Virus record (IMG/VR): IMGVR_UViG_3300017763_000002
Coordinates: 62,001-126,000 of that record
Reading direction: 5' to 3' (one strand)
DNA: 64,000 nt
Shown: piece by piece, positions 11,468 to 42,809 of the stretch
Numbering within the stretch: position 1 is the first letter of the stretch
How the letters are laid out: every line of letters begins with the position of its first letter
Translations under genes and position numbers: made by a program
Notes under the pieces: generated by a model
The model's database searches: none
What the model was told of the DNA's origin: nothing
What the model saw: only the letters and a program-made list of their open reading frames with translations

Positions 11468-12601
11468 TTAAATATTCTCAAACAGTTGTGAAGTTTTTTT
11501 AATATTGTCTGGATTGTTCGGGCTGTATTTCCAGCACAACTCTTTTCCTTGTTCTAGTTTTATATCCAAATTATCGTTGTGTTCTTCTGTGGCAAGCTTT
11601 AATTGTTCTGCAGCTTCAATCATATTAAAATCTTCGTAGTAATATCCAAAATCTTTTATAAATTCAGAGTTATGAACTAAAGGGTATCCAAAATGGGCAG
11701 CTTCTAAATACGTATAATTTAATGCATTTAAATGTTGGTGGCTGAGAAAAATGGGGTTATCTTTACTCATAATTTTTGGCATAGCTTCTCGTGGATCGAA
11801 TATCATTCTTTTTATATGGTTTCTGAAAACCCTATCATTTAATATTCTAGATCTTAGTTGATCTTTTTCATCATTGATTAATTTTAATGTGCCAAAGAAT
11901 ATAGCTTTTTCAAAAATATCTGGATAATGTACTAATAAATGTTTAACTGTAAATAATGGAGGTATAAAAGTTTTACTAAAGTTAATATTGGGTTCAACTA
12001 TAGCAATATTATTTTTTTCTTTTATATTGTATTTTAAATCTTTTTCTTGTATATTAAGAACTTGTGCTGAACCATATATAAATTTAGGATCCCATATATA
12101 TGGTAGCTCAAAAGTATTTGGCGAAGTATTTATTTTTAAATAATCTTCACAGAAGTCGTAATGGGGAGAATATAGAACTGCGTCATGAATTAAAGAACTT
12201 GGCTCGGAAGCCCAGCCTCCATGGTTTTCTTCACTGCAAATATAATTACAAATATCTGTAACTAAAACATTTCCATAATTAATGGCAGCAATTTTACATT
12301 CTGAATTCACTGATTTGTATTTTTCTGCATGCTCTGGATTGCATGCTATGCCTGGGGTACAAACGACATCTAAATGGTGCTTTATTGGTGACAATTCATC
12401 GTAAGATATAATGTTTTTATTATTTAAAAAACTTTGTTCAATGTCTGTTTTAATTATAGACTCTTCTTGGTTTCCGCAAAAATCTATAAAAAATACATCG
12501 TGCCCAGCGGATTCAAGTATTTCATAAAGTAGTATTATGTTCTGGTACAACCCGTTAGAAAAAAATCCGTAATTAAATCTAGTAGTTATTCCTATATGCA
12601 T
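11468..12601 (-). CDS. DUF2827-like putative GT-B glycosyltransferase
   Basis: MHIGIT..FFSNGLYQNIILLY; IAIVEPNINFSK; SHQHLNALNYTYLEAAHFGYPLVHNS..GYYY, recognised as the DUF2827 pattern with a GT-B donor-binding-like ExxxxGxP. Confidence 0.65.
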   Translation of the reverse strand: MHIGITTRFNYGFFSNGLYQNIILLYEILESAGHDVFFIDFCGNQEESIIKTDIEQSFLNNKNIISYDELSPIKHHLDVVCTPGIACNPEHAEKYKSVNSECKIAAINYGNVLVTDICNYICSEENHGGWASEPSSLIHDAVLYSPHYDFCEDYLKINTSPNTFELPYIWDPKFIYGSAQVLNIQEKDLKYNIKEKNNIAIVEPNINFSKTFIPPLFTVKHLLVHYPDIFEKAIFFGTLKLINDEKDQLRSRILNDRVFRNHIKRMIFDPREAMPKIMSKDNPIFLSHQHLNALNYTYLEAAHFGYPLVHNSEFIKDFGYYYEDFNMIEAAEQLKLATEEHNDNLDIKLEQGKELCWKYSPNNPDNIKKTSQLFENI

Positions 12602-12607
12602 GAATAT

Positions 12608-12615
12608 TGTTACAC
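12608..12615 (-). promoter_or_regulatory. GTGTA motif (candidate late promoter)
   Basis: GTGTAACA starting 14 nt before the ATG at 12601. Confidence 0.6.
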
Positions 12616-12631
12616 ATAATGTTTTTTAATA

Positions 12632-12680: not shown

Positions 12681-12688
12681 GTGTACAG
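12681..12688 (+). promoter_or_regulatory. GTGTA motif (candidate late promoter)
   Basis: GTGTACAG starting 15 nt before the GTG at 12696. The ORF track uses this GTG as the start codon. Confidence 0.55.
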
Positions 12689-12695
12689 ATATAGC

Positions 12696-14741
12696 GTGAG
12701 CAAAAGAAAATATAATAAAAAGTCTGACTATTGGAAAAAATTCGACAAGCCTAATTCACCAGCAATCCCTATAGTCTCTGAGGATCAAGTGCCTCCTGCT
12801 TTTGCTGGAGAGTCTTATTATTCTGAAACCACAAATGCGTCGGTAATATTGCAGCAATCTAATGCGAACAGAAATGAACCAGGGCAAAGTAGGACAAATA
12901 GAAGGTCTAATACTAAAGCTAAAGCTCAAAAGAAAGATAAGTATGAAAATATAAGAAGCGGGGTATTGCCTTATGATTTTTCTTCTAGCGGAATTTCTAT
13001 AAGAGATTCTGTTGAACTCTGCCAGAAGGCCTACGCTAATATATCAATTTTTAGAAACGCAATAGATATTATGTCTGAGTTCGCCAACTCAAATATACAG
13101 CTTCAAGGCGGCAATCAGAAGTCAAGAGAATTTGTATATAAGTGGTTTGATAAAGTTAATTTATGGAAAATTAGAGACCAATACTTTCGAGAGTATTACA
13201 GGTCTGGGAATATCTTCATGTATAGAGTGGACGGAAAATTCACGCGAGAAGACTTTGCTAAAATGTCTAAGGTTTATGGCGGTTTGGAGCCTGGTAGAAT
13301 ACCAATAAGATACATATTTCTTAACCCTTATGATATTATGGCTCATCGGGCGACAACTTTTAGTGAGGGCCAGTATTTTAAAGTCTTATCTGAATACGAT
13401 TTAGAAAGACTGAAGAGCCCCAAGACAGAATATGATCAGCAGGTATTTGATAGTATGCCTAAGGAAGTAAAAGAAATATTAGATACTAATTCTTTTCCAA
13501 GAGATGGGGTTAAAGTTCCTCTTCCTGATGATAAAATTATTCACTCTTTTTATAAAAAGCAGGATTACGAACCGTTTGCAATACCTTTCGGCTTCCCCGT
13601 GTTAGATGATATAAATTACAAAATAGAACTTAAAAAAATAGATCAGGCTATATGTAGAACTATAGAAAATGTTATATTGCTTATTACTATGGGCGCTGAA
13701 CCTGAAAAAGGGGGGATAAATCCTAGAAATTTAGAAGCCATGCAGAAGCTTTTTCAAAACGAAAGCGTTGGGAGGGTTTTGGTTAGTGACTATACTACTA
13801 AGGCAGATTTTGTTATACCAGATATAAGGAAGGTTGTTGGCCCAGATAAATATCAGATAGTTAATCAAGATATTAGGGAGGGATTACAAAACATTATTGT
13901 TGGAGACGAAAGATATAGTAATACTCAAGTAAAAGCAGAAATCTTTTTAGAAAGATTAAAAGAAGCAAGGAACGCTTTTCTTAATGATTTCTTGCAAGAT
14001 CAAATTAAAATGGTTTGCGAAAATATGGGCTTTAGGCAATACCCTGTAGCTCATTTTGAAGAGATTGATATTAAAGACGAAGTCCAATTACAAAGAGTCG
14101 CCACAAGACTGATTGAATTAGGCATACTTACTCCTGAACAAGGAATTAATGCAATTAAATCTGGAATATATCCTGCGGGGGAAGATTTAGATCTCGCTCA
14201 AGAAGAATTTTTGTCTCAAAGAAAAGAGGGTAAATTTAATCCATTAGTCGGAGGAGTTCCTTCTGTTGAGAATCCAGGGGCAGAAAAAGATAGGGCTCTT
14301 CAGAAAGAAACTATGCAAAAAGCTGCACCTCCTGTCCAACAAAGTGCACCTACAAAAGAAAGCGGTAGGCCTACTGGCACTAATGGAATTCCGCAAGAAA
14401 ATAAATCAACAGAAAAAATTACACCTTCAGATATAAAAGATGTTATATTTAAAATAGAAAATTTAAACAAAGCTGTTAAGTCTCAAGTATTAAAAAAGCA
14501 TTCTGTAAAAAAACTTAATAAAGCACAAAATAAAATGGTAGACGAATTATGCGAATCTATTATATGCTCTTCTAGTCAAAATGAATGGGAAAAAGTTGCG
14601 CAATGCTGTATGGATGATAATAATCAAATCGCTAAGTTACAAGTAATTCCTGAGATACTAGATATAAGTCAAGAGAAGGAGCTGGGTTTGTATCCGTCGG
14701 CTATATTTTATCATAGTATGGGGGAATTTACTGATGATTAA
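12696..14741 (+). CDS. Probable portal protein
   Basis: Size and portal-like pattern (FRNAIDIMSEFAN...QYFREYYRSGNIFMY; PFAIPFGFPVL; helical C-half; GRP tail); first gene of a structural block. Start refined to GTG 12696 (MSKRKY). Confidence 0.6.
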   Translation: MSKRKYNKKSDYWKKFDKPNSPAIPIVSEDQVPPAFAGESYYSETTNASVILQQSNANRNEPGQSRTNRRSNTKAKAQKKDKYENIRSGVLPYDFSSSGISIRDSVELCQKAYANISIFRNAIDIMSEFANSNIQLQGGNQKSREFVYKWFDKVNLWKIRDQYFREYYRSGNIFMYRVDGKFTREDFAKMSKVYGGLEPGRIPIRYIFLNPYDIMAHRATTFSEGQYFKVLSEYDLERLKSPKTEYDQQVFDSMPKEVKEILDTNSFPRDGVKVPLPDDKIIHSFYKKQDYEPFAIPFGFPVLDDINYKIELKKIDQAICRTIENVILLITMGAEPEKGGINPRNLEAMQKLFQNESVGRVLVSDYTTKADFVIPDIRKVVGPDKYQIVNQDIREGLQNIIVGDERYSNTQVKAEIFLERLKEARNAFLNDFLQDQIKMVCENMGFRQYPVAHFEEIDIKDEVQLQRVATRLIELGILTPEQGINAIKSGIYPAGEDLDLAQEEFLSQRKEGKFNPLVGGVPSVENPGAEKDRALQKETMQKAAPPVQQSAPTKESGRPTGTNGIPQENKSTEKITPSDIKDVIFKIENLNKAVKSQVLKKHSVKKLNKAQNKMVDELCESIICSSSQNEWEKVAQCCMDDNNQIAKLQVIPEILDISQEKELGLYPSAIFYHSMGEFTDD

Positions 14742-15045
14742 TAATATTGTAAGTCAAGCAGGTTATTTAGAATTAGTAAAAGCTAGCTCCACAACGATCG
14801 CTAATTTAGGTATTTTTTTATGTAATATAGATACAAAAAACGCTGATGTTATTGATCTTTTTATTGTGCCATCTGGAGGAACCCCCGGAAACGAAAACAA
14901 AATATTATCAGAACTTTATATTCCCCCAAGTCAAACTTTTAGTTTTGGGGAAGAAAAATTTATATTGGAGCCTGGAGACTCAATAGGCTTCTCATCTCAG
15001 GTTGGAGGCAGAATTACTGCAACCGTAACTTTTACTGAATTATAA
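14734..15045 (+). CDS. Small beta-rich putative virion protein
   Basis: 103 aa, FLCN...DLFIVPSGG...IPPSQTF...LEPGDSI; translationally coupled to the portal. Confidence 0.6.
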   Translation: MINNIVSQAGYLELVKASSTTIANLGIFLCNIDTKNADVIDLFIVPSGGTPGNENKILSELYIPPSQTFSFGEEKFILEPGDSIGFSSQVGGRITATVTFTEL

Positions 15046-16943
15046 TGGCCGGCTTTGTTCCAAAAGAAGATGCTATATCCGGAGCCTACCTTAGGCTTAA
15101 CGGAGACGACGAAGTATTTGGGCATAAGGATTTTATTAACGATGTAACTATTCGTGGTGATCTTCAAGTTTCTGGAGATATGCGTGTTTCTCAAATAGTA
15201 GATTTTACTAGTGAGTCTGGAGATATTAGCGGGCATATATTTAGGGGTAGTACAGCATATTTTGATGAAGTGGTCGTAGGCCAATTATCTGCGCTAGAAA
15301 CTTCTGGGGGTTCTTCTGGTGAAACTTCTGGAGGATTAGATACTGGGCCGGTTTTTGTAAGATCAGTGAGTGCTGTTAATGGAGTAAGGGAAATATTGGA
15401 GTCGGAATACAATGGGGAGATTATAAGAAAAGTTAAAACTGCAAGCGATCAAGTGGATGTGGGACTTATGTTAGAGCGCGGAGATGCTCAATCATATAAA
15501 CCTTCAATTTTCTATTCTGTAAGCGGGGTAGATAATTCCGATCAAGCGATTGACCCCTCCTCGTTATCAACGCATTCTAATGGGTATTCTTTTAATTCAA
15601 CAGTTAGGCTTGATGCTTCGACTCCTAAAACTTATTTATTTAAAAACGGATCAAGGCAAACTTATTTAATAATAGAAAAAGATACTCCCCCGCAAATTAT
15701 ATCTGCAGAATTTGTTAACAAGTTAGGGACTGGCAGTTTTTATGGAACTGCTTCTTTTAATTCCGAATCTGGAGCGGTGACAGTACAGCAGACTGAAGCT
15801 AGAAATGGCGATGTTGCTAGGGTTAAGGTAGTTGCAAATAAAGCTATAGGGCAAATACATATATCGGGGGCAGCAGTGTCAAGTAAAACTGTAAACTCTC
15901 CTTCTTATATAGATAATCTAGATGGAACTTATACGCATGAATTTGATGTAAATGTTTCCGCTTCAAACTCTGTATCTGATAGAAGTTTTACTATAAGAGT
16001 GAATGATTTAGTTGGTAATCCTTCTGAAAATTACAATTCAGATAATACAATTAAAACAAATAATCAATCTCCGTCTGGCAGTATATCTATATCTTATCCT
16101 AATAATACGGGATTAATGAATAATACTACTGACATAGTTTCTTTTAATGTAAGTGCTAATAATTTTGATCATTATAATTTTAGTAATAGTGGTATTTTTT
16201 CTATTAAAGAGGAGCCTACTACTTTAACTGGTGGACCTTTTAAATTTTCTGCAGAAAACGCAAACTCTAGAACTAGTGGTAGTTTTTCTGTGCAAGTATT
16301 TAAAGCTTCGAATGGGCGAACGGCTAGTTTTTCCAGCTCATCCGTGCAAGTCCAGTCTTTTGGAACTACGCCTTCTTTAAATTTTTCTCCAAACCTTTTT
16401 AGTTCTTCAAATTCAGGGGCTGTTTTGAATAATGTAAATATAACCTTAAGCGAAGAAGTAGATGTATTGACCGTAGATTCGGTTTCTGATACAAGTATAT
16501 CAATACAAAACTTAACAAAGAATAATAATAAATCTTTTTCTTTTCAAATATCTGTAGATGATTCTTCTCCAAGAGGAACTTTTACAATTAATTTTGCAGG
16601 CACAAAAATAATAGGAGATAGTTTTAGTAAAAGTGATACTGGATCTATTAGAGGGTTTAATCAAAGAACAGTGACCGCTCTTGCGACTGCATATGAGCCA
16701 GTAGATATTGGGGTAAATGTATTTAATACTTCACGATTAGTGGTTTCTGTCCAGCCTGACGGAGGTAATTCTTTTTCGGTGAACTATGACTCAAATATTA
16801 CTGGACCAAAACAAGATGGAACAAGTAATCTTGAGGCTGCATTTGGGATAATAGATGATAATAAAATAGTAATAGATAATCAAGTTATTACTAACGCTGG
16901 GAATGTAAGTGATGTTTTTATAACCGTGGAGGAGTTGCAGTGA
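15045..16943 (+). CDS. Ser/Gly/Asn-rich putative virion structural protein (Ig-like domains)
   Basis: 632 aa; N-terminal fibre-like GDLQVSG; beta-strand-rich segments such as PPQIISAEF and IRVNDLVGN. Confidence 0.6.
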   Translation: MAGFVPKEDAISGAYLRLNGDDEVFGHKDFINDVTIRGDLQVSGDMRVSQIVDFTSESGDISGHIFRGSTAYFDEVVVGQLSALETSGGSSGETSGGLDTGPVFVRSVSAVNGVREILESEYNGEIIRKVKTASDQVDVGLMLERGDAQSYKPSIFYSVSGVDNSDQAIDPSSLSTHSNGYSFNSTVRLDASTPKTYLFKNGSRQTYLIIEKDTPPQIISAEFVNKLGTGSFYGTASFNSESGAVTVQQTEARNGDVARVKVVANKAIGQIHISGAAVSSKTVNSPSYIDNLDGTYTHEFDVNVSASNSVSDRSFTIRVNDLVGNPSENYNSDNTIKTNNQSPSGSISISYPNNTGLMNNTTDIVSFNVSANNFDHYNFSNSGIFSIKEEPTTLTGGPFKFSAENANSRTSGSFSVQVFKASNGRTASFSSSSVQVQSFGTTPSLNFSPNLFSSSNSGAVLNNVNITLSEEVDVLTVDSVSDTSISIQNLTKNNNKSFSFQISVDDSSPRGTFTINFAGTKIIGDSFSKSDTGSIRGFNQRTVTALATAYEPVDIGVNVFNTSRLVVSVQPDGGNSFSVNYDSNITGPKQDGTSNLEAAFGIIDDNKIVIDNQVITNAGNVSDVFITVEELQ

Positions 16944-31972: not shown

Positions 31973-32001
31973 TTGACTTTATTGGAATCCTGTTATATCA
32001 T
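31973..32001 (+). promoter_or_regulatory. sigma70-type promoter
   Basis: TTGACT-17 nt-TATCAT; the predicted +1 falls at about the ATG at 32008. Confidence 0.65.
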
Positions 32002-32007
32002 CATCTC

Positions 32008-32337: not shown

Positions 32338-33247
32338 ATTTGAGGGCGGGCTAGGAGATCATGTTTTAGCCAATAGATTTATTCCCGCTATATTGGAAAC
32401 ATATCCAGGAGCAGAAATCCATTTATTCTCAGATACAAATGGATCATCTTTTCAGAGCGATGTTATAACTTCTTTGTATAATTTTTATAAAGAAGTACAT
32501 TTAGTAAAAAGAAAATCTGAAAAATATGAAATATTAAGTCAATTCGGAAAAGAAAACTACCCACCGCATCCGCCTAATCTAGATGACGAACAAAGAGAAT
32601 ACATGGAATCTTTTGATAAATTTTATAATTTACATATCGACTGGCTACAGTGGATGGATTATGAATTTCCTTGGCAGAAATATTTTAGCTTTTTCCCGAC
32701 GCCGCATTCTGATATTAAAAATTTTAATCATGATAAAGATTATATCATTTTACATATCGCCTCAGACAATAGAGGCAACAATCATAGAATGAGTAAAGAG
32801 TACATTCACAGCATAATTAAAAAATGCACAAAAGAATATGATGTTTTCCTTTTATCAACTGACTCTACAGACGATTTTGTAAGAAAAGTGTGTCCAGATA
32901 TAGATGGCGTTTTTGTATTGAAAGAAAACATTAACACTGTTATTTCTGCATGCAAAAGTGCCTCTGGTATTTTTGCTATAGATTCCGCAATCAAATACTT
33001 TGGATATACTTTTAACGTACCCACTTTGTGTTGGGCTAAAGAATCTACTGCAGCACACTCGTGCCCGACTTCATTCAAGATGCGCTGGTTAACTTTCCCA
33101 CTATTAACATTTCCCTTAGAGCATGACTCAAATTACATGTGGGGCGCAATGAATAACTTAATAAACAATAACAACAATATTTTTTGCCCACACCTTCAAG
33201 AGCCAGAATTATCGAACACTTTAATCAGAAGGAGGATATGGACTTAA
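32321..33247 (+). CDS. GT9 (heptosyltransferase)-like glycosyltransferase
   Basis: GGLGDHVLA..IPAILETYPGAEIHL; YIILHIAS; IFAIDSAIKYFGYTFNVPT, a variant of GxDSGxxHxAxAxxxPT. Confidence 0.65.
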   Translation: MRISVKFEGGLGDHVLANRFIPAILETYPGAEIHLFSDTNGSSFQSDVITSLYNFYKEVHLVKRKSEKYEILSQFGKENYPPHPPNLDDEQREYMESFDKFYNLHIDWLQWMDYEFPWQKYFSFFPTPHSDIKNFNHDKDYIILHIASDNRGNNHRMSKEYIHSIIKKCTKEYDVFLLSTDSTDDFVRKVCPDIDGVFVLKENINTVISACKSASGIFAIDSAIKYFGYTFNVPTLCWAKESTAAHSCPTSFKMRWLTFPLLTFPLEHDSNYMWGAMNNLINNNNNIFCPHLQEPELSNTLIRRRIWT

Positions 33248-33981
33248 ATCCAAAAATAGCCCTTTTATTTAGTGGCAAACTTGGAGCGTGGGAAGAATGC
33301 TCAATGTCAATAGTAGAAAATATCATATGGCCACTAAGACCAGATGTTTTCGTAACAACTTGGGACGATCAACCATCTTACGATTTCTGTAAATATTACA
33401 ACCCAGTAAAAAGAGAAATACTAAATTTTAAAAACACAATGGACTATCTAGGCCCTACAGATACATTATCCTGTCAACCTAACCCCGGCTTGATACCCAT
33501 GCTTGCTGGCTTCAAGGTTGCAAACACAATGCTTCAGAATCACCGCAAGAAGTATGATTTAGTTATAAGACTACGCCCCGACGTTCAGGTTTTAGATTCT
33601 ATAAAAATTCATGAAAAAAAAGACTGCCTAAAAAACAAACATATAAGACTACCTCTCTTCGAAAGTACAAATATATATAATCATGAAGAAGAGTTAAAAA
33701 AAGAATTTAACTTTAGTTTTGTTTATGAAAAAGCTTCACTACCAGATCAAGTTAATGACCAAATAGCTATAGGACATCCAGATCAAATGAATAAATACCT
33801 AAATTCTCTTTTTAGTGTTGCTACAGTTATAAATGAAATGTGGGATCAGGGTTATCCAGAATACATGATGAAAGTTCCAGAATCTGTACTCACAATGTGC
33901 TTAAAAAAACAACAATGTAAATACAAAAGATTAACTGGATCCTCACAGCAGGGAAATATAAAAACCAAACTAATAAAATGA
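33238..33981 (+). CDS. Putative glycosyltransferase-like protein (KIALxxSG family)
   Basis: KIALLFSGKL; DVFVTTW; KYDLVIRLRPD; NDQIAIG. Start refined to ATG 33238 after AGGAGG. Confidence 0.55.
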   Translation: MDLNPKIALLFSGKLGAWEECSMSIVENIIWPLRPDVFVTTWDDQPSYDFCKYYNPVKREILNFKNTMDYLGPTDTLSCQPNPGLIPMLAGFKVANTMLQNHRKKYDLVIRLRPDVQVLDSIKIHEKKDCLKNKHIRLPLFESTNIYNHEEELKKEFNFSFVYEKASLPDQVNDQIAIGHPDQMNKYLNSLFSVATVINEMWDQGYPEYMMKVPESVLTMCLKKQQCKYKRLTGSSQQGNIKTKLIK

Positions 33982-35363
33982 TTAATCTTGTAATATTCGA
34001 TTTGGATGGAGTGCTTATAGACTCTAGGGAACTCCACTTTAAATCCTTCAACGAAGCACTTCTTAATATTTGCCCTGATTACGCTATAGCTAAAGACGAA
34101 CACCTTTCTACTTATGATGGTCTACCCACCAAAAGAAAGCTAGCGTTATTAACAGAAAACAAAGGGTTGCCAAGTTCTAAATACAATGATATCTGGCAAG
34201 AAAAACAGAAAATTACATTAAAATTAATGAACGAGTATACTAAAGATGATAAATTGTACGAAATACTTTCCGAACTTAAAGAAATGAATCTTAAAATAGG
34301 TTTAGCCTCTAATTCCATAAGGCAAACTATACTATCAGCCATGCACAATAAAGGCGTTTTGCATTTCTTTGATTATATTTACAGTAATGAAGATGTTATA
34401 AGACCAAAACCAAACCCAGAAATGTATTATAAAATAATGATTCAAAGCGGCATACCTTCTAGTGAAACTTTAATATTAGAGGATTCCAATACAGGTAGGC
34501 GAGCTGTTTATAATTCTGGAGCACATCTAGGCGCAATTAAAGATCCCGACGATTTAACAAAAGACAAAGTTATGAGCTATATACAAACAATAAAACAAAA
34601 AACCAACGCAAAAACAAAATGGGAAGGGGGAGATATGAACGTATTAATCCCTATGGCTGGAGCAGGAAGCAGGTTCGAACAAGCGGGGTATTCTTTTCCT
34701 AAGCCGCTGATTGACGTCAAAGGTCACCCAATGATTAAGATCGTAGTGGACAGTTTAAATATTAACGCTAATTATATATTCATTGTGCAAAAATCACATT
34801 ATGAAAAATATGCATTAAAACATACATTAAACTTGATAGCTCCTAATTGCAAAATCATTCAAGTAGACGGTCTCACAGAAGGAGCAGCATGCACAACTCT
34901 ACTCGCAAAAGAATTAATAAATAATAATAAACCATTATTAATTGCAAACTCAGATCAATATCTAGACTGGGACAGCAATCAATTTATGTATTCAGTTACT
35001 GCAGATAATGTAGATGGAGGCATACTCACCTTTCCCTCCACCCACCCAAAGTGGAGTTATGCAAAATTAGCACCTGATGGATTTGTCAAAGAAGTTGCAG
35101 AGAAAAAACCCATTAGCGAACATGCTACCGTAGGAGTTTATTTTTTCAGAAAAGGCGAGGATTATGTTTCAGGAGCAGAACAAATGATAAGTAAAAATAT
35201 TAGAACTAACAACGAGTTCTATGTTTGCCCTGTATATAATCAGTGTATTAATAATAATAAGAAATATAAAATCTTCAATATAACAGAAGATAGCATGTGG
35301 GGTTTAGGTACTCCTGAAGATTTAGAATTCTTTATTAAAAACAATGAAACTTATAGCTCATAG
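33978..35363 (+). CDS. HAD phosphatase fused to a sugar/polyol nucleotidyltransferase
   Basis: HAD motifs FDLDGVL, KPNP and ILEDS; C-half LIPMAGAGSRF..PKPLIDV..TEGAACT..ANSDQ..VKEVAEKK..EFYVCPVYN..GLGTPEDL. Confidence 0.85.
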   Translation: MINLVIFDLDGVLIDSRELHFKSFNEALLNICPDYAIAKDEHLSTYDGLPTKRKLALLTENKGLPSSKYNDIWQEKQKITLKLMNEYTKDDKLYEILSELKEMNLKIGLASNSIRQTILSAMHNKGVLHFFDYIYSNEDVIRPKPNPEMYYKIMIQSGIPSSETLILEDSNTGRRAVYNSGAHLGAIKDPDDLTKDKVMSYIQTIKQKTNAKTKWEGGDMNVLIPMAGAGSRFEQAGYSFPKPLIDVKGHPMIKIVVDSLNINANYIFIVQKSHYEKYALKHTLNLIAPNCKIIQVDGLTEGAACTTLLAKELINNNKPLLIANSDQYLDWDSNQFMYSVTADNVDGGILTFPSTHPKWSYAKLAPDGFVKEVAEKKPISEHATVGVYFFRKGEDYVSGAEQMISKNIRTNNEFYVCPVYNQCINNNKKYKIFNITEDSMWGLGTPEDLEFFIKNNETYSS

Positions 35364-35766
35364 AGGAAACACTAATGGAAGAAACAGAAGAGAAGAAAAC
35401 AAGCCCGACTACATCAAGAAAGCCTTAGCCCAAGGCTTTGACGTTGAAGTTGACGTTTGGTTAATGGACGGCATTTATTTCGGGCATGATGAGCCTCAGT
35501 ATGAATGTGATATGGATTTTTTATTAAATAATCATGAAAAGCTTTGGATACATTGTAAAAACTTATCAGCATTAAATAGCCTCTCAGACTTCTTTAATCT
35601 AAATGTATTCTGGCACGAAGAAGACAAGTTTACCTTAACATCTCAAGGTTTCATATGGACTTACCCTCACAACACAATATGTTCAAAATCTGTCATTGTT
35701 TGCAGTGACTCAAAATATTCAAAATACCAAGACTGTTACGGAGTGTGTTCCGATTTTCTAAGATGA
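35344..35766 (+). CDS. Glycerophosphodiester-phosphodiesterase-like small protein
   Basis: LIAHRG; GFDVEVDVW; GHD; WIHCKN; GVCSD. Confidence 0.7.
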   Translation: MKLIAHRGNTNGRNRREENKPDYIKKALAQGFDVEVDVWLMDGIYFGHDEPQYECDMDFLLNNHEKLWIHCKNLSALNSLSDFFNLNVFWHEEDKFTLTSQGFIWTYPHNTICSKSVIVCSDSKYSKYQDCYGVCSDFLR

Positions 35767-36626
35767 ACTACAAAATTTGGTATAAAAGATTCTTAGAGAA
35801 TATGTTAGAGAGATATCAAGCTCTCGAAAAAAGCGTTTCAATTCTAATACAAGGCCCGCTTCACGAAAGAATGAGGGAATCTATACCACTCTATTTAGAT
35901 ATAGTCAAAAACCATCAACACTTTCAGCCAAAACTCAAAAACAATCCCTACTCAAAAGATTCCTTCTTAGGTAATTTAGTAATATCTTACTGGGATAATG
36001 ATGACGAAAGTATAATCAATGATTATAAATCTAATCAAGATATTTTTTTATTAAAAAACAGTCAAAAAGAAGTCAACGAACACTTGTACAAAAAAACAGG
36101 TAGGGGTAGCGCTCCATGGGTTTATCAAAATCATTCCAGCTATTACGGAACAAAATCTTGCACAGGACATCTTTGTATAAAAGTAAGAAGTGATGAGTTT
36201 TATCCTAGCTTAGAAAGCTTTTATGTAGATATAAAAAATGAAAACGAAAAACCCGGAGAAGTCGGAAAGTATACAACTTGTGATATTTTTTTTAGAAAAG
36301 ATTCTGTTGAAAAATTTCACCCGTCTGACCATATTATTGGAGGGCCAACTTATTTACTTAAATCAGGTTTCCAGACTTCTCTTTATAGGTGTAAACAAAA
36401 GATACCCGAATACATTAAGTTTCCAGAACAATTAATATGCAGAAGTTTTTTAGAGTCAAGAAATGTAGATGTAAAGGATTATAGATCAGCAGAAATAATG
36501 AAGAAATATTTTAAAATATACCCAATAAAAAATATGCCAAATAGTATCTGGACTTGTAGTTACAGAAATTATGCACCGCTAAAAGGCACAGAGCCTGGAT
36601 GGCTGCACGATATTAATCAAATATAG
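35763..36626 (+). CDS. WavE-like LPS biosynthesis protein
   Basis: SILIQGP; LVISYW; IKVRSDE; SDHIIGG; PEQLI. Start refined to ATG 35763 (ATGA overlap). Confidence 0.55.
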   Translation: MNYKIWYKRFLENMLERYQALEKSVSILIQGPLHERMRESIPLYLDIVKNHQHFQPKLKNNPYSKDSFLGNLVISYWDNDDESIINDYKSNQDIFLLKNSQKEVNEHLYKKTGRGSAPWVYQNHSSYYGTKSCTGHLCIKVRSDEFYPSLESFYVDIKNENEKPGEVGKYTTCDIFFRKDSVEKFHPSDHIIGGPTYLLKSGFQTSLYRCKQKIPEYIKFPEQLICRSFLESRNVDVKDYRSAEIMKKYFKIYPIKNMPNSIWTCSYRNYAPLKGTEPGWLHDINQI

Positions 36627-36650
36627 TTATTAACATTGCGAATTATTATC

Positions 36651-36679
36651 TTGATCTAATGCCTAAAATTTAGTAAAAT
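36651..36679 (+). promoter_or_regulatory. sigma70-type promoter for nrdA
   Basis: TTGATC-17 nt-TAAAAT; the -10 ends 9 nt before the ATG. Confidence 0.55.
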
Positions 36680-36687
36680 TAAAGAAC

Positions 36688-39123: not shown

Positions 39124-39127
39124 ATGC

Positions 39128-39156
39128 TTGACATTAATTTTATTATAGTATATAAT
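39128..39156 (+). promoter_or_regulatory. Perfect sigma70 consensus promoter
   Basis: TTGACA-17 nt-TATAAT. Confidence 0.85.
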
Positions 39157-39172
39157 TTATAGCTAATAAACT

Positions 39173-39709
39173 ATGAATCTAAGTCTATATAAACCAAACA
39201 GTAAGAATACTGGGTGCGCTTTTAATTTTAGTATTGGTCAAGGATCTAAAAACCTTCCTGCACTTTATGTCAGCGCTATTCAGCAGCATAGCTGGGACTC
39301 TAAAACCAAAAAAGGTAGTTTCTCAGAGAGTAAAGAAGATCCTAATAAAAACATCAATGTTAAGTTCAATGAGTGGGAGGTAGGATCAATGATTTCTGCC
39401 TTTAACAATCGTCACGAATACTCAGCGTATCATACTTTTGATGAAAATTCTACAACAATCAAACTAACCCCTTGGGATAAAGTAACCAAGTCTGGGGATA
39501 AAAGCATTACTCTTCCAGCTTTTGGAGTAGTATTTACCAGAAACGGCAATCAACAATTTAGACTACCATTAGAGCCCGGAGAAGTAGAAGCTCTTAAAAT
39601 ATTTTTTAAAAAATATCTCGAAGAATACATATTAGCAACTCGACAGAATTATAAACAAAACAATACAAAAACAAAAAGCGTTACAGACTCAGATGAAGCG
39701 CCTTTTTGA
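39173..39709 (+). CDS. Hypothetical protein with an SSB-like acidic C-terminal tip
   Basis: 178 aa beta/alpha protein ending TDSDEAPF; downstream of a consensus sigma70 promoter. Confidence 0.65.
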   Translation: MNLSLYKPNSKNTGCAFNFSIGQGSKNLPALYVSAIQQHSWDSKTKKGSFSESKEDPNKNINVKFNEWEVGSMISAFNNRHEYSAYHTFDENSTTIKLTPWDKVTKSGDKSITLPAFGVVFTRNGNQQFRLPLEPGEVEALKIFFKKYLEEYILATRQNYKQNNTKTKSVTDSDEAPF

Positions 39710-41655
39710 TGAATAAAAAAAAGATACTATTTCATAGTAATTCATCTAAAGCTTTAACTGGTTTTGGAAAAAACGCTAGAAACATATTATCTTATCTATA
39801 CTTAACAGAAAAATATGATATTGTAGAAATATCCAACGGCATACAAGAGAACGATCCAAAGTTAAATCTTATGCCGTGGAAGTGTTTAGGTGGGATTCCC
39901 TCTGACCCAGATTCAATAAATAGAATCAAGACTGATAGTAGTTTTAAATCTAAAGCGCTTTATGGTGGATTAAGAATAAAAGAAATAATAGAAGAAGAAA
40001 AACCTGATGTTTACATTGGTTCGGAAGATATATGGGCTTTTTCAGACTGGTGGAATAGTAGGTGGTGGAAAAAAATAAACACTATTCTCTGGACTACCAT
40101 TGACTCTGTGCCAATTCTACCTGCAGCTATAGATGGTTACGAAAATTCAACTCATTTTTTTACTTGGTCTAAGTTTGCAGCAAAAGAAATGGTTAATTCT
40201 GGATGCGCAGAAGTATCACACCTTCACGGGCCAGTAGACTGTAAAAATTTTTATAAATTAAATAAAGACAAAAAAAATAAAATAAGAGAATCTTTCAATA
40301 TAAGTAGCGATACTTTTATTATCGGGTTTGTTTTTAGAAACCAATTACGCAAAACTGTACCAAACTTACTAGACGGCTTTAAAAAGTTTAAAGAAAAATC
40401 TCAATCAAACGCTAAACTCTTATTACATACTAATTGGCAAGAAGGTTGGGATATACCAAAACTACTAAAAGAAAAAGGTATAGCTAACAACGAAATATTA
40501 ACAACTTATTATTGCAAAAAATGCAAAAAATATGAAATAAAACCTTTTGCGTCAGATGAAAAATCTAAAGGTGAAAACTTAACCTGCCCCTTTTGCTTTT
40601 CAAAAAAATCTCAAAACACAATAAGTATTGATGCTGGTCTATCAGAGTCTCAGTTAAATGAGATATATAATGTAATGGATGTATATTGCCACCCTTTTAC
40701 CAGTGGTGGGCAAGAAATACCTATACAAGAAGCTAAGCTTTGCGGCTTGATTACCTTAGTTACAAATTACAGTTGTGGAGAAGACTGTGCGCACAAAGAT
40801 TCTGGAGGCATACCTTTAAAATGGAATGAATATCGGGAGCCAGGAACCCAGTTCATCAAGGCTAGCACCTGCCCAAATAGTATCTGCAGTAGCTTACTCA
40901 AGGTATATGTAATGAGTGAAGAAGAAAAAAATAAAATGTCAGAACAAGCAATTAATTTTGTATTAAAAAACTATTCCATCGAAAATACTTGCAATAAACT
41001 AATGAGCTTTATAGATGAATATAAAAAAGTCGATTGGGATTTTAAAATATCTAAACTTAAACCTGATATATCCTACGCAATGCCCACTAAATGTAGCGAC
41101 AAAGACTTTATATTAAATATATACAGCAACATGCTCAAGATGGAAATTAGTGAAAAAAATAAAATATATAAATTTTTACTAGAAAAATTAAAATCTGGTA
41201 CAAAACGAGAGCAACTCTTCCAAGCTCTCAAAAAAACCGCAACACAAGAATTAGAACAGCTTTCAAAAACAAACAAAAGCCTTGAAGAAGTATTGTTAGA
41301 AGATAAAGAAAGTAAAAAAATAGCTATCGTCTTACCGAAAAGTATTGGAGATGTTTTCCTATCTACATCTTTATTTCCAGAGATAAGAAAAAATTATCCA
41401 GACTACAAAATATATTATGTAACCAACCCAGAATTTTTTAGCATACTAGAAGGCAACCCATATATACATAAAGTATTACCCTATACCTATCAATTTTTAG
41501 ATTCTCTGTATCTCGAAGGATTCTCTAATCGTACAGACAGAAAGGATCATGATGGCTTCTTTGACATATCAATCCTACTCAATACACACACACAAAGAAT
41601 ACCTAATTATACCAGAAACGGAATTGATAAAATAGGGATAGAATTATGCACTTAA
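39706..41655 (+). CDS. GT4-like glycosyltransferase with a CxxC..CxxC insert, fused to a GT9 N-terminal lobe
   Basis: TGFGKNA; GFVFRNQLRK; CKKC..CPFC; HPFTSGGQEIPIQEAKLCG. C-terminus KKIAIVLPKSIGDVFLSTSLFPEIRKNYPDYKIYYVT..LEGNPYIHKV. Confidence 0.75.
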   Translation: MMNKKKILFHSNSSKALTGFGKNARNILSYLYLTEKYDIVEISNGIQENDPKLNLMPWKCLGGIPSDPDSINRIKTDSSFKSKALYGGLRIKEIIEEEKPDVYIGSEDIWAFSDWWNSRWWKKINTILWTTIDSVPILPAAIDGYENSTHFFTWSKFAAKEMVNSGCAEVSHLHGPVDCKNFYKLNKDKKNKIRESFNISSDTFIIGFVFRNQLRKTVPNLLDGFKKFKEKSQSNAKLLLHTNWQEGWDIPKLLKEKGIANNEILTTYYCKKCKKYEIKPFASDEKSKGENLTCPFCFSKKSQNTISIDAGLSESQLNEIYNVMDVYCHPFTSGGQEIPIQEAKLCGLITLVTNYSCGEDCAHKDSGGIPLKWNEYREPGTQFIKASTCPNSICSSLLKVYVMSEEEKNKMSEQAINFVLKNYSIENTCNKLMSFIDEYKKVDWDFKISKLKPDISYAMPTKCSDKDFILNIYSNMLKMEISEKNKIYKFLLEKLKSGTKREQLFQALKKTATQELEQLSKTNKSLEEVLLEDKESKKIAIVLPKSIGDVFLSTSLFPEIRKNYPDYKIYYVTNPEFFSILEGNPYIHKVLPYTYQFLDSLYLEGFSNRTDRKDHDGFFDISILLNTHTQRIPNYTRNGIDKIGIELCT

Positions 41656-42809
41656 TAGAAAATTACGCGTTAAATGCAGGGGTAAAAATAGATCGACCTT
41701 TTATCGATCCTTCTTTCTTTCCAGTGCCCTCAGATAATTATATTACTATACATTGCTCTTCAGGAATGCAGTCTAAAAACTTTGATTATTATGAAGACGT
41801 AGTAAGATTAATAAAACCATATTTAGACGACAAAGGTATAGATATTTTTCAAATAGGTTTAGAAGGGGAGCCTATCATTAACAATGCAAACACTTTATTA
41901 GGACAAACAAACATCAGGCAAGCGGCATATGTAATCAAGAACTCAAAGCTTCATTTAGGAAACGATTCTTTTGCATGTCATTTTGCTAGCCACTTTGATA
42001 TACCCATTGTAGCACTATATGGTCCAGCAGTCAAAGAGACCTGTAAACCTTATTGGGGAGACAAGTCTAAGCACATACTACTTGAGCCAGAACTAAAAGG
42101 GTTTAAGCCGTCTTATAGCGCACAAGAAAGAACGAAAAGAGTAAACACTATATGCACTTTCAAAATCGCTTCCGCAGTATTAGACTTACTTCACATTAAA
42201 CACAATATAAACAATAAACAAATTTTCATTGGAGATAGTTATCATTTACCAACAATTGATGTAGTACCAAACTTCGATCGTTCTAATAAAAAAGAGCTAG
42301 ACGAAATTAACGGCATTAATATAAGGCTCGATTATGAAGAAGACAATTCATATATAGAACAATGGTTATCATCCAATCCTGTAAATATTTATATTAATTC
42401 TCATAAACAATTAGATTATATTAAAAAATACATTGATAATATAAAACAAATCCATGTTACGCTAGACTTAAATTCAATTGACTCCCTAGCAGCAGAGGTC
42501 TACTCCCTCAACAAACCATGCTTCTTTTATAGCAAAAATAATAAAGACCTCTCAAAGGTTAGAATTAAATTTTTTGATGTAGATGTTATGGCTCTAGACT
42601 CTAAACAAGAAAATTACCTTGACATTTCTAAAGAAATATGCGATAATTACTTTCAATCATCACTTAAACTATATTCAAATAATAAAATATATCCATGCAA
42701 AGCATATCTAAATATCGACAAAAGCCCCAGCGACAAACAAAAATGCTTAAGTACAGATGACTTTTATACAGAACTAGTATTCTTTAAAATTTATAAAACA
42801 AATGACTAA
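41646..42809 (+). CDS. GT9 C-terminal lobe plus additional domain
   Basis: MHLIENYA (interlobe linker-like); YITIHCSSG..SK; IFQIG; TNIRQAAYVIKNSKLHLGNDSFACHFASHFDIPIVALYGP. Confidence 0.7.
   Translation: MHLIENYALNAGVKIDRPFIDPSFFPVPSDNYITIHCSSGMQSKNFDYYEDVVRLIKPYLDDKGIDIFQIGLEGEPIINNANTLLGQTNIRQAAYVIKNSKLHLGNDSFACHFASHFDIPIVALYGPAVKETCKPYWGDKSKHILLEPELKGFKPSYSAQERTKRVNTICTFKIASAVLDLLHIKHNINNKQIFIGDSYHLPTIDVVPNFDRSNKKELDEINGINIRLDYEEDNSYIEQWLSSNPVNIYINSHKQLDYIKKYIDNIKQIHVTLDLNSIDSLAAEVYSLNKPCFFYSKNNKDLSKVRIKFFDVDVMALDSKQENYLDISKEICDNYFQSSLKLYSNNKIYPCKAYLNIDKSPSDKQKCLSTDDFYTELVFFKIYKTND
42619..42647 (+). promoter_or_regulatory. Intragenic sigma70-type promoter
   Basis: TTGACA-17 nt-GATAAT with TGn, inside the upstream CDS, about 155 nt before the ATG at 42802. 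Confidence 0.5.

What the first reader, a model, noticed from the sequence alone, without database searches (positions are those of the whole stretch)
11468..42809. Nine-gene glycan/LPS-type biosynthesis kit beside Ser/Thr-rich virion proteins: candidate virion glycosylation system
The window holds DUF2827-like (11468), GT4-like (28950), GT9-like (32321), KIALxxSG family (33238), HAD-nucleotidyltransferase (33978), GDPD-like (35344), WavE-like (35763), GT4-GT9N (39706) and GT9C (41646) genes. The DUF2827-like gene carries the same GTGTA motif as the portal and fibre genes and lies between them. Established: some mycobacteriophages glycosylate their capsid and tail with their own GTs, and other phages convert host O-antigen or modify DNA. 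Inference: GT9 and WavE are LPS-core-type chemistries, so the phage may build a multi-sugar glycan on the virion or remodel the host surface.
Basis: inference. Interest (0 to 1): 0.75.

Follow-up and report, generated by a model that had tools for sequence, protein, structure and literature searches.

The report
Marine jumbo phage glycosylation gene kit
An uncultured 205-kb marine phage carries at least eleven soluble sugar-transferase domains plus sugar-activating and sugar-trimming enzymes in three gene clusters beside its fibre genes, which most likely decorate its own fibres with glycans, although modification of the host's outer membrane remains a live alternative for the largest cluster.

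Summary
All nine gene calls hold at family or fold level, although three (GT9-like 32321, WavE-like, GDPD-like) stay below Pfam thresholds. The Ser/Thr-rich proteins and the GTGTA motif are also real.

The kit is larger than reported. A second DUF2827 gene, three more GT-A enzymes, a sulfotransferase and three methyltransferases lie outside the window, just upstream of a 5895-aa giant protein.

The kit splits into two regulatory classes:
- **GTGTA class:** both DUF2827 genes and the outside cluster carry GTGTA, the motif shared with structural genes. GTGTA occurs 107 times in the genome, and 27 of these lie 8-45 nt upstream of start codons (2.2 expected).
- **Sigma70-like class:** the window's large island (32008-43563) sits behind TTGAC-N17-TATAAT promoters, like the replication genes.

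The window's DUF2827 gene forms a two-gene operon with the most Ser/Thr-rich protein of the genome, an 18-residue-repeat fibre. Close relatives keep this linkage.

No thymidylate-synthase-type hydroxymethylase exists, which weakens DNA glycosylation. No kit protein is membrane-spanning.

Best reading: virion (fibre) glycosylation for the DUF2827 part. The acceptor of the early island is unresolved between virion proteins and host LPS core. Nothing is shown biochemically.

I rate it a new variant of a known kind.

The parts
11468..12601 (-). DUF2827 glycosyltransferase (GT-B, GT4-like fold), first gene of a two-gene late-type operon
   Evidence: Pfam PF10933 E=1e-52. AF2 pLDDT 92.9; Foldseek BshA/PimA/MshA E~1e-8.
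12610..12615 (-). GTGTAA motif 14 nt upstream of the DUF2827 start codon (putative late/structural-gene promoter element)
   Evidence: The same motif lies upstream of the first DUF2827 gene in relatives.
10034..11431 (-). Ser/Thr-rich fibre-like protein with about 17 copies of an 18-residue repeat (SLTTRVSAEEVEMDSKAG) and a C-terminal globular part; candidate acceptor
   Evidence: 27.5% S+T, highest in the genome. Sequence and repeats. Orthologues directly downstream of DUF2827 genes keep S-x-x-T-R-x-S every 18 aa.
9987..10004 (-). Intrinsic-terminator-like hairpin closing the DUF2827-fibre operon
   Evidence: 7 pairs, 6 of them G-C, followed by a T run.
12681..14741 (+). Portal protein, divergent from DUF2827; a GTGTA motif at 12681-12685 overlaps the annotated start
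   Evidence: tblastn to annotated portal proteins of Bacillus phages Stahl and Staley, E=2e-10. Motif.
15045..16943 (+). Ser/Thr-rich (22.8%) structural-module protein
   Evidence: Orthologues conserved next to the portal.
28950..30038 (-). GT4-like glycosyltransferase, downstream of the SSB and sigma-like factor genes on the same strand, with overlapping ORF ends
   Evidence: PHROG 2170 E=8e-21. Conserved in 20 loci.
30414..31019 (-). Phage sigma-like factor (candidate reader of the GTGTA motif; inference)
   Evidence: PHROG 351 E=6.5e-7. Weak Sigma70_r2 hit.
31973..32001 (+). Sigma70-like promoter (TTGACT-17-TATCAT) ahead of the 32008-36626 operon
   Evidence: CTTGAC is kept upstream of orthologues; none of them has GTGTA.
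32008..32337 (+). Conserved 109-aa protein of unknown function, first gene of the operon
   Evidence: Conserved in 17-19 loci. No family hit.
32321..33247 (+). Divergent GT9-like protein with the N-terminal GGLGD motif
   Evidence: Absent from 5 related loci.
33238..33981 (+).
   Evidence: AF2 pLDDT 85.5. Foldseek GT6/GT8 E~1e-7. Atlas TM 0.84 to a DUF7796 cluster.
33978..35363 (+). Fusion of a beta-phosphoglucomutase-like HAD domain and a sugar-1-phosphate nucleotidyltransferase (sugar activation)
   Evidence: Pfam HAD_2 3e-30, NTP_transferase 2e-7. PDB beta-PGM 1e-14 and 4evw 3e-18. 56-60% identical copies in T4-like cyanomyoviruses.
35344..35766 (+). 140-aa mini GDPD-like phosphodiesterase, the constant partner of the HAD-NT gene
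   Evidence: Found beside HAD-NT in 66 of 71 loci. Invariant H6 R7 G8, N19, E35, D37, H48 D49, with E18 nearly invariant. Profile against PDB GDPD 7e0v E=3e-4. Atlas TM 0.79.
35763..36626 (+). WavE-like (GT-A-like) protein
   Evidence: Atlas feature score 0.97 and TM 0.77 to PF07507 clusters. No Pfam hit.
39128..39156 (+). Perfect sigma70 consensus promoter (TTGACA-17-TATAAT) ahead of 39173-43563
39173..39709 (+). Conserved 178-aa protein of unknown function, first gene of the second operon
   Evidence: Conserved in 23 loci. No significant family hit.
39706..41655 (+). GT4 domain (with an invariant Cys4 insertion) fused to the N-terminal Rossmann domain of a GT9 enzyme (SIGD motif)
   Evidence: PHROG 2170 4e-23, PF00534 3.5e-7, TIGR02193 positions 1-57 at aa 538-594. 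Cys4 and the GGQE.PIQEAK motif are invariant in 20 orthologues.
41646..42809 (+). GT9 C-terminal domain (K44 and D107-S108 motifs) plus a 230-aa extension; the second half of a split GT9
   Evidence: PF01075 35.3 bits. WaaF 1psw E=2e-7. The split, with a 10- or 13-nt overlap, is kept in 21 loci. Complex model ipSAE 0.85, best control 0.00; the mark was reached by 51 of 78 solved complexes and 2 of 108 mismatched pairs.
42802..43563 (+). Conserved 253-aa protein of unknown function, last gene of the operon
   Evidence: Conserved in 19-21 loci at about 62% identity. No family hit.
43540..53796 (-). 3418-aa tail fibre converging on the island
   Evidence: C-terminal Peptidase_S74 chaperone domain, E=9e-15; CBM_5_12. 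PHROG tail fibre. 18.4% S+T.

Best explanation
The phage encodes a wholly cytoplasmic glycan-building kit spread over three loci.

**Part 1 (best supported).** This part comprises:
- two DUF2827 GT-B glycosyltransferases, one at window 11468-12601 and one at G000 17095-18150;
- the cluster around the second copy: GT34-like, GT2 and GT32-like enzymes, a sulfotransferase and three methyltransferases.

These genes are transcribed with the structural genes from GTGTA-type promoters. They most likely O-glycosylate the phage's own Ser/Thr-rich fibres in the cytoplasm before assembly, and may methylate or sulfate the glycans. The clearest candidate acceptor is the 18-residue-repeat fibre co-transcribed with DUF2827. 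This mirrors the proposed role of bacterial DUF2827 proteins next to trimeric autotransporter adhesins.

**Part 2 (the window's large island, 32008-43563, plus GT4-like 28950).** It is expressed from host-type sigma70-like promoters.
- The HAD(beta-PGM-like)-nucleotidyltransferase fusion, with its constant mini-GDPD partner, activates a sugar or sugar-phosphate.
- Six transferase units then build or extend a multi-sugar glycan: GT4-like, GT9-like, GT-A, WavE-like, GT4, and a GT9 split over two polypeptides.
- I slightly favour virion proteins as the acceptor over the host LPS core.

**Shown:** gene families and folds, conservation, promoter motifs, operon layout.

**Inferred:** timing, acceptors, and every chemical step.
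For: **Intact and conserved.**
- Families and folds are verified.
- The whole block stays syntenic and open in 21-23 related loci at 35-60% identity.
- Motifs kept: the GD motif of the GT9 N-domain, K44 and D107-S108 of the GT9 C-domain, the GGQE.PIQEAK region of GT4, and the GDPD catalytic set.

**Link of DUF2827 to fibres.**
- The DUF2827 gene, the most Ser/Thr-rich protein of the genome and a terminator form one operon.
- In relatives, one to three tandem DUF2827 genes are followed directly by one or two repeat-fibre orthologues that keep S-x-x-T-R-x-S every 18 residues.
- The second copy lies one small gene upstream of a 5895-aa giant protein.

**Co-regulation with structural genes.**
- GTGTA lies upstream of starts 27 times against 2.2 expected. 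These starts belong to tail and fibre genes, both DUF2827 genes and the outside cluster.
- The motif is conserved upstream of the first DUF2827 gene in relatives.

**Precedents.**
- GT9-type enzymes heptosylate autotransporter adhesins (PMC4358343).
- Mycobacteriophages glycosylate capsid and tail tube (Freeman 2023, as cited in PMC12619734).

**Other support.**
- All kit proteins are soluble.
- The island's content varies between relatives (extra GT2, GT7-like and methyltransferase genes; GT9-like 32321 sometimes missing), as expected of a diversifying glycan.
Against: - No glycan has been observed on any protein.
- The early island has no GTGTA motif. It sits among replication and nucleotide-metabolism genes (SSB, dNMP kinase, RNR), the pattern of T4 DNA glucosyltransferases and of host-takeover genes.
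- GT9 and WavE chemistries are classically LPS-core enzymes. Those enzymes are also soluble or peripheral, so solubility does not discriminate.
- Across 34 non-redundant viral DUF2827 loci, the most Ser/Thr-rich large ORF is the immediate neighbour in 16, against 10.7 expected (P about 0.04, not corrected for relatedness). This is only a modest association.
- Phage fibres are often Ser/Thr-rich without being glycosylated.
- The S-x-x-T-R-x-S core may be purely structural.
Confidence: 0.45

Rival explanations
1. Host envelope remodelling. The early island (GT9-like, split GT9, WavE-like, GT4s, GT-A, HAD-NT/GDPD) acts on the host's lipid A-core or another cytoplasmic-face glycolipid soon after infection. 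This would change the cell surface to exclude superinfecting phages or to stop progeny from sticking to debris. Only the DUF2827 part, if any, would touch virion proteins.
For: - Sigma70-like promoters match those of early genes.
- GT9 C-domain matches LPS heptosyltransferase II (WaaF, 1psw, E=2e-7).
- Atlas neighbours of the WavE-like protein carry PF07507 (WavE lipopolysaccharide synthesis).
- The HAD-NT and GDPD-like pair is shared at 56-60% identity with T4-like cyanomyoviruses. There it lies in islands with glycosyltransferase and nucleotide-sugar epimerase genes.
- The cyanophage literature reads cell-wall-type gene sets of this kind as host-surface modification (PMC12801897).
Against: - No lipid-linked initiating transferase, flippase, polymerase or Gtr-type membrane protein is present in the kit.
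- The host is unknown, so it is not known whether it has a heptose- or Kdo-type core.
- The island abuts a giant tail fibre gene, and the rest of the kit is regulated with structural genes.
Confidence: 0.28
2. DNA hypermodification. The early island glycosylates phage DNA bases to evade restriction, as the T-even alpha- and beta-glucosyltransferases and other phage enzymes do on 5-hydroxymethylcytosine.
For: - The island sits in the replication and nucleotide-metabolism module, next to SSB, a T4 gp1-type dNMP kinase and RNR.
- It has early-type promoters.
- GT-B enzymes dominate. The DUF2827 model also resembles T4 alpha-glucosyltransferase, TM 0.61, rank 41.
- Diverse DNA glycans made by phage GTs are reported (Pyle 2024, cited in PMC12619734).
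Against: - No ThyA-family (dCMP/dUMP hydroxymethylase) or ThyX gene exists in a genome that CheckV rates 100% complete, so there is no known hydroxymethyl handle.
- The genome has been assembled repeatedly from ordinary Illumina metagenomes.
- GT9, WavE and GT-A types are not known DNA glycosyltransferases (my own knowledge).
Confidence: 0.07
3. A soluble product rather than a macromolecular acceptor. The HAD-NT and GDPD-like pair, with some transferases, would make a small glycoside or sugar-phosphate metabolite during infection, for example a compatible-solute-like compound or a signalling or defence-blocking molecule. The clustering with fibres would be incidental.
For: - The HAD-NT and GDPD-like pair travels as a unit between unrelated phage lineages, independently of the other transferases.
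- GT-B GT4-like enzymes closest to the DUF2827 model include small-molecule glycosyltransferases (BshA, MshA).
Against: - Six or more transferase units of different folds in one conserved block, and variable extra GT and methyltransferase genes in relatives, point to an oligosaccharide rather than a single glycoside.
- DUF2827 is in an operon with a fibre gene.
Confidence: 0.08

Closest known systems
Mycobacteriophage virion glycosylation (Che8, Corndog, Myrna type; Freeman et al. 2023)
   Same: Phage-encoded glycosyltransferases placed by structural genes modify the phage's own virion proteins in the cytoplasm.
   Different: - That system is experimentally shown, in actinobacteriophages. It uses one to a few GTs acting on capsid and tail-tube C-termini.
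- Here nothing is shown.
- The enzymes are of other kinds: DUF2827, GT9-like, WavE-like, GT4 and GT-A.
- The kit has at least 11 GT domains plus sugar activation, methyl- and sulfotransferases.
- The candidate acceptors are fibres.
- The host is a marine, presumably Gram-negative, bacterium.
Adhesin glycosylation in bacteria: BAHT heptosyltransferases (TibC/AAH on TibA/AIDA-I) and DUF2827 genes beside trimeric autotransporter adhesins
   Same: - Soluble cytoplasmic GT9-type or DUF2827 enzymes are encoded next to long, repetitive, Ser/Thr-rich fibrous surface proteins.
- DUF2827 occurs in 1-3 tandem copies in both settings.
   Different: - The acceptor here would be a phage fibre with 18-residue repeats, not a secreted autotransporter.
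- The phage GT9 C-domain matches LPS WaaF, not TibC, among solved structures.
- DUF2827 activity is unproven even in bacteria.
Glycosyltransferase and 'LPS / cell-wall' gene islands of T4-like cyanomyoviruses (S-CAM9, S-PRM1, B3/B23, S-SCSM2R)
   Same: - They share the HAD-nucleotidyltransferase fusion (56-60% identity) and its 140-aa GDPD-like partner, set among variable GT genes.
- Their function is equally unknown.
   Different: - Different phage lineage: this one has a lambda-J-type central tail fibre, no psbA, and giant fibres.
- The GT9-like, split GT9, WavE-like and DUF2827 genes are not found in cultured phages by tblastn.
T-even phage DNA glucosylation (alpha- and beta-glucosyltransferase on hydroxymethylcytosine)
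   Same: Early-expressed GT-B enzymes encoded among replication and nucleotide-metabolism genes.
   Different: - No hydroxymethylase gene.
- Many more transferases, of different families.
Glycosylation machineries of giant eukaryotic viruses (chlorovirus PBCV-1 capsid glycans, mimivirus fibril glycans); from my own knowledge
   Same: Virus-encoded nucleotide-sugar synthesis plus many GTs build complex glycans on virion proteins or fibrils, independently of host pathways. Gene sets vary between relatives.
   Different: Eukaryotic viruses with unrelated enzymes. The phage case is computational only.

Membership tests
DUF2827 (PF10933) | Full-length match above Pfam's gathering score | tested here: met
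   179.5 bits against a cut-off of 25, positions 14-357 of 362. Second copy at G000 17095-18150: 187.3 bits.
DUF2827 (PF10933) | Glycosyltransferase fold (GT-B) | tested here: met
   AF2 pLDDT 92.9. Foldseek probability 1.0 to GT4 enzymes BshA, PimA and MshA.
GT9 / heptosyltransferase (PF01075) - split pair 39706-41655 and 41646-42809 | Pfam match above the cut-off, with N-domain GD and C-domain K / DS(G) motifs | tested here: met
   - C-domain: 35.3 bits against a cut-off of 22; WaaF E=2e-7.
- N-domain: TIGR02193 positions 1-57.
- G48-D49, K44 and D107-S108 are invariant.
- The fold lies on two polypeptides; complex model 0.85 against best control 0.00 (mark reached by 51 of 78 solved complexes and 2 of 108 mismatched pairs).
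GT9 / heptosyltransferase - 32321-33247 | Significant sequence match to PF01075 or to solved GT9 structures | tested here: inconclusive
   - No Pfam hit.
- 4 of 24 homologues hit PF01075 at best E 0.03.
- 1psw E=0.72 in the DSG region.
- hhalign to the GT9 N-domain family: E=4e-4, probability 33%.
- Atlas neighbours are GT9.
GT9 / heptosyltransferase | Use of ADP-heptose as donor | not testable with these tools
   I looked for no heptose-pathway gene (GmhA, HldE). Donor specificity cannot be read from sequence.
WavE (PF07507) - 35763-36626 | Pfam match above the cut-off | tested here: not met
   No hit at E<=0.01 or in six frames at E<=10 (the control genomes did not ring either). Similarity is seen only through the Atlas: score 0.97, TM 0.77. 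It is WavE-like in fold, not a demonstrated member.
GDPD (PF03009) - 35344-35766 | Full TIM-barrel domain match; catalytic His/Arg/Glu/Asp/His set | tested here: inconclusive
   - No Pfam hit.
- The profile hits GDPD 7e0v at E=3e-4 over the first 50 residues only.
- The catalytic-type residues are invariant apart from E18, which is nearly invariant.
- The protein is about half the length of a GDPD domain; Atlas TM 0.79.
Beta-phosphoglucomutase (TIGR01990) | Equivalog score; D8, D10, H20, S114, S116, K145, E169, D170 and the distal phosphate site | tested here: not met
   - 74.6 bits against a cut-off of 189.
- The alignment to L. lactis beta-PGM keeps D8, D10, H20, S114, S116, K145 and E169-D170, but not K117 or N118.
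- It is a HAD-IA, beta-PGM-like domain; mutase versus phosphatase is undecided.
Sugar-1-phosphate nucleotidyltransferase (PF00483) | Pfam match above the cut-off | tested here: met
   31.2 bits against a cut-off of 21.2. PDB 4evw E=3e-18. The substrate is unknown.
Phage virion glycosylation system (mycobacteriophage type) | GT genes encoded by the phage and placed or regulated with structural genes | tested here: met
   Met for both DUF2827 genes and the outside cluster: GTGTA motif and an operon with a fibre. Not met for the 32008-43563 island, which has sigma70-like promoters.
Phage virion glycosylation system (mycobacteriophage type) | Glycans covalently bound to virion proteins | not testable with these tools
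   Needs virions and mass spectrometry.
T4-type DNA glycosylation | dCMP or dUMP hydroxymethylase (ThyA fold) to create the acceptor base | tested here: not met
   PF00303 and PF02511 are absent from the genome, which CheckV rates 100% complete.
Lysogenic O-antigen conversion (Gtr type) | Membrane proteins GtrA, GtrB and a GT-C-type transferase | tested here: not met
   No multi-pass membrane protein among the 24 kit proteins by a hydropathy scan. This was a heuristic scan only.

The most novel reading that the evidence does not exclude
A lineage of marine jumbo phages has taken over the bacterial adhesin-glycosylation strategy.
- DUF2827 enzymes, made late, O-glycosylate the conserved S-x-x-T-R-x-S positions of an 18-residue-repeat coiled-coil fibre, and possibly the giant fibres.
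- The glycans are extended by an early-made set that includes a GT9 enzyme split over two polypeptides.
- That set is fed by a beta-PGM-like mutase-nucleotidyltransferase fusion. The fusion would make an NDP-beta-sugar directly from a sugar-6/7-phosphate, the anomeric type that GT9 enzymes use.
- The glycans are then methylated and sulfated.

This would be the first virion glycosylation system of a phage of Gram-negative marine bacteria. It would also give the first assigned function for DUF2827 and for the HAD-NT/mini-GDPD pair that is widespread in cyanomyoviruses.
Probability: 0.25. Interest if true: 0.8.

Novelty: new variant of a known kind. Interest (0 to 1): 0.6.

Why it matters
Virion glycosylation is established only for a few mycobacteriophages and for giant eukaryotic viruses.

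**For phage biology.** If these abundant marine phages coat their fibres with self-made, strain-variable glycans, that would bear on host range. It could also bear on how sticky the particles are to marine polymers and how they are grazed or decay in the sea; those last effects are my speculation.

**For bacterial DUF2827.** The phage operon gives a compact test bed: one DUF2827 gene plus one repeat fibre. It could settle what bacterial DUF2827 proteins do next to trimeric autotransporter adhesins.

**For cyanophage islands.** The HAD-nucleotidyltransferase and mini-GDPD pair is shared with many T4-like cyanophages. Its chemistry is a general open question for the 'LPS-like' islands of marine phages.

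Tried and rejected
- **Near-identity search against 50,697 GenBank phages:** no match. tblastn with DUF2827: no match. With the GT4-GT9N protein: only weak cyanophage GT hits.
- **Profiles of the 32321 and 35745 families against PDB sequences:** only noise.
- **hhalign comparisons:** the GT-A (KIAL) family against the WavE-like family, and the 32321 family against the GT9 C-domain family, showed no relation (probability 5.6% and 3.3%).
- **WavE Pfam model in six frames:** nothing, and the controls were also silent.
- **Split GT9 as a frameshift or assembly error:** rejected. The two-ORF layout with a 10- or 13-nt overlap recurs in 21 loci, and no slippery heptamer is visible at the junction.
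- **Cyanophage identity:** no psbA; the host stays unknown.
- **'Moraphages' (PMC12619734):** these are T4-like myoviruses with sheath and baseplate genes. This phage has a lambda-J-type tail, so I did not equate them.
- **Bacterial DUF2827 loci from genome contigs:** the search failed because no pattern was conserved enough. I could not re-test the adhesin association myself.
- **RNA libraries:** they hold exact fragments of the island, but as contigs only. This does not prove transcription or timing.

Full report
**Context.** The window is bases 62001-126000 of a 204,906-bp virus record from IMG/VR. The record is 34% G+C and CheckV rates it complete.
- It is a tailed phage with a lambda-J-type central tail fibre (1632 aa), several giant proteins (5895, 3418, 2343 and 1832 aa) and a replication module.
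- It has no close cultured relative.
- The same sequence occurs in at least five marine or viral metagenome runs, listed under four different studies.

**Are the nine genes real?** Yes. Each is an intact ORF, and the whole block from 28606 to 43563 stays in the same order in 21-23 related viral contigs at 35-60% protein identity.
- DUF2827 (11468-12601, minus strand) scores 179.5 bits. A confident model (pLDDT 92.9) has a GT-B, GT4-like fold.
- 28950-30038 matches PHROG 2170 (glycosyltransferase, E=8e-21).
- 33978-35363 is a fusion of a beta-phosphoglucomutase-like HAD domain and a sugar-1-phosphate nucleotidyltransferase.
- 39706-41655 holds a GT4 domain plus the first 57 positions of the heptosyltransferase model.
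- 41646-42809 holds the heptosyltransferase C-domain.

The genes without Pfam hits needed other evidence.
- The 'KIALxxSG' protein (33238-33981) folds confidently (pLDDT 85.5) into a GT-A fold like GT6 and GT8 enzymes.
- The 140-aa protein keeps the HRG, EN, ExD and HD motifs of glycerophosphodiester phosphodiesterases. Its profile finds a solved GDPD at E=3e-4, but it is only half a domain long.
- 35763-36626 resembles WavE clusters only through the ESM Atlas (score 0.97, TM 0.77).
- 32321-33247 is GT9-like on several weak, concordant signals only.

**The split GT9.** The heptosyltransferase fold is divided between the C-terminus of the GT4 protein and the next gene.
- The same two-ORF layout, with a 10- or 13-nt overlap and the same frame relation, occurs in all 21 loci that hold both genes complete. 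It is therefore not an assembly error.
- No slippery site is visible at the junction.
- A complex model places the two halves together: ipSAE 0.85, best of three controls 0.00. In calibration, that mark was reached by 51 of 78 solved complexes and 2 of 108 mismatched pairs. The score may partly reflect the model's memory of single-chain GT9 structures.
- The motifs expected of an active enzyme are invariant: GD in the N-domain, K44 and D107-S108 in the C-domain.
- The GT4 domain carries an invariant Cys4 insertion.

**The kit is bigger than the finding.**
- A family search of the whole genome found a second DUF2827 gene at G000 17095-18150.
- Around that copy lie three methyltransferases (one TylF-like), a GT34-like enzyme, a GT2 enzyme, a sulfotransferase and a GT32-like DXD enzyme. 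All sit just upstream of the 5895-aa protein.
- The genome thus holds at least 11 transferase domains.
- Two related complete genomes carry two and three DUF2827 copies.
- 127 stretches in IMG/VR encode a relative. None of 50,697 GenBank phage records does.

**Two regulatory classes.**
- GTGTA is rare in the genome: 107 occurrences on both strands. Of these, 27 lie 8-45 nt upstream of start codons, where 2.2 are expected.
- The genes behind GTGTA are mostly large structural ones: the J-like tail fibre and the 2343-, 1832-, 1575- and 1114-aa proteins. Both DUF2827 genes, the GT2 and GT32-like genes and the small gene just upstream of the 5895-aa protein also carry it.
- In relatives the motif recurs upstream of the first DUF2827 gene of each tandem.
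- By contrast, the operons starting at 32008 and 39173 have TTGAC-N17-TATAAT promoters; the one at 39128-39156 is a perfect consensus. The RNR and helicase genes and many small early-type genes have the same type.
- None of the island's orthologous upstream regions has GTGTA.
- I read GTGTA as a late or structural promoter element, perhaps recognised by the phage sigma-like factor at 30414-31019. That is inference.
It does not extend to the other eight genes.

**The DUF2827-fibre operon.**
- Downstream of DUF2827 on the same strand lies 10034-11431, followed by a strong terminator-like hairpin.
- Its product has 27.5% Ser+Thr, the highest in the genome (mean 12.0%, sd 3.7).
- It consists of about 17 copies of an 18-residue unit plus a globular C-terminus.
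- In the closest clade, one to three DUF2827 genes are followed directly by one or two orthologous fibres. Their repeats differ except for a core S-x-x-T-R-x-S every 18 residues.
[quoted passage not shown] It proposes them as cytoplasmic adhesin glycosyltransferases.
- GT9-type enzymes that heptosylate autotransporter adhesins are established (PMC4358343).
- The parallel is suggestive, but the statistics are modest. In 34 non-redundant viral loci the most Ser/Thr-rich large ORF is the immediate neighbour of DUF2827 in 16 cases, against 10.7 expected (P about 0.04, relatedness not controlled).

**What the early island might act on.**
- All 24 kit proteins lack multiple membrane spans. The chemistry is therefore cytoplasmic or at the inner face of the membrane.
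- That fits virion proteins, DNA or lipid A-core.
- DNA is unlikely, because the genome has no ThyA- or ThyX-family gene and hence no known way to make a hydroxymethyl base.
- LPS-core remodelling stays open. The island is early, and its GT9 C-domain matches WaaF.
- The HAD-NT and GDPD-like pair is shared at 56-60% identity with T4-like cyanomyoviruses, where it sits among glycosyltransferase genes. Similar cyanophage gene sets are usually read as host-surface modification (PMC12801897).
- In favour of virion proteins, the island converges on a 3418-aa tail fibre with a C-terminal S74 chaperone domain.
- Also in favour, the rest of the kit is tied to structural genes.
- The island's content is plastic between relatives, as expected of a glycan under diversifying selection. 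Changes include an extra GT2, a GT7-like enzyme and methyltransferases, a GT9-like gene that is sometimes missing, and an RNR gene inserted in the closest clade only. Plasticity fits either acceptor, however.

**The sugar donor.**
- The HAD domain keeps D8, D10, H20, S114, S116, K145 and E169-D170 of beta-phosphoglucomutase, but it scores far below the equivalog cut-off.
- A mutase-nucleotidyltransferase fusion would give an NDP-beta-sugar. That is the anomeric type used by GT9 enzymes, according to established knowledge of ADP-L-glycero-beta-D-manno-heptose.
- This is an untested idea.
- The mini-GDPD partner, found beside the fusion in 66 of 71 loci, has no assigned step.

**Verdict.**
- Fibre glycosylation is the best reading for the DUF2827 part.
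- The acceptor of the early island is unresolved.
- Exact fragments of the island occur in two rRNA-depleted metatranscriptome runs, which is compatible with expression but does not prove it.
- I rate the system a new variant of a known kind (virus-encoded virion glycosylation). My confidence in the overall explanation is 0.45.

Noticed in passing
window 12681-12700: The portal ORF's annotated GTG start (12681) is itself part of a GTGTA motif. A GTG at 12696 would put the motif at -15, the usual spacing, so the true start is probably 12696.
   Followed up: partly
window 31071-31634 (+) against 31007-31552 (-): The plus-strand ORF with four hydrophobic segments lies antisense to a well-supported dNMP kinase gene (PHROG 139, E=6e-35). 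It is probably spurious.
   Followed up: partly
window 40513-40596 (aa 270-297 of the 39706-41655 product): A CxxC-x20-CxxC insertion in the GT4 domain, invariant in 20 distinct orthologues. It looks like a metal-binding ribbon of unknown role.
   Followed up: partly
G000:C1:10399-18726 (outside the window): A second glycan cluster: three methyltransferases (one TylF-like), GT34-like, GT2, sulfotransferase, GT32-like and DUF2827 genes, just upstream of a 5895-aa protein with CBM_5_12 and RCC1-like repeats.
   Followed up: partly
L015:7130-9999 and L021:6540-9990: Relatives carry an extra GT2, a GT7-like galactosyltransferase-type gene and methyltransferases (FkbM type in L021) between the GT-A gene and HAD-NT. 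RNR large subunit is inserted in the island only in the seven closest loci.
   Followed up: partly
window 30414-31019 (-): A phage sigma-like factor (PHROG 351, E=6.5e-7), conserved in relatives, next to SSB. It may read the GTGTA motif.
   Followed up: no
window 4259-4663 (-): An HNH homing endonuclease gene between the UvsX-like recombinase and the DnaB-like helicase genes.
   Followed up: no
window 24436-25956 (-): A 506-aa protein with 99-nt tandem repeats (3.9 copies, 95% matches), giving 33-residue helical-looking repeats.
   Followed up: no
window 16945-19068 and 20380-24435: Two neighbouring structural proteins carry thrombospondin type-3 (calcium-binding) repeats and share a 69-aa segment at 64% identity.
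   Followed up: no
G000:C1:147126-152624: A second large fibre (1832 aa) shares the C-terminal S74 chaperone region with the 3418-aa fibre (33% identity over 106 aa). It has a GTGTA motif at -15.
   Followed up: no
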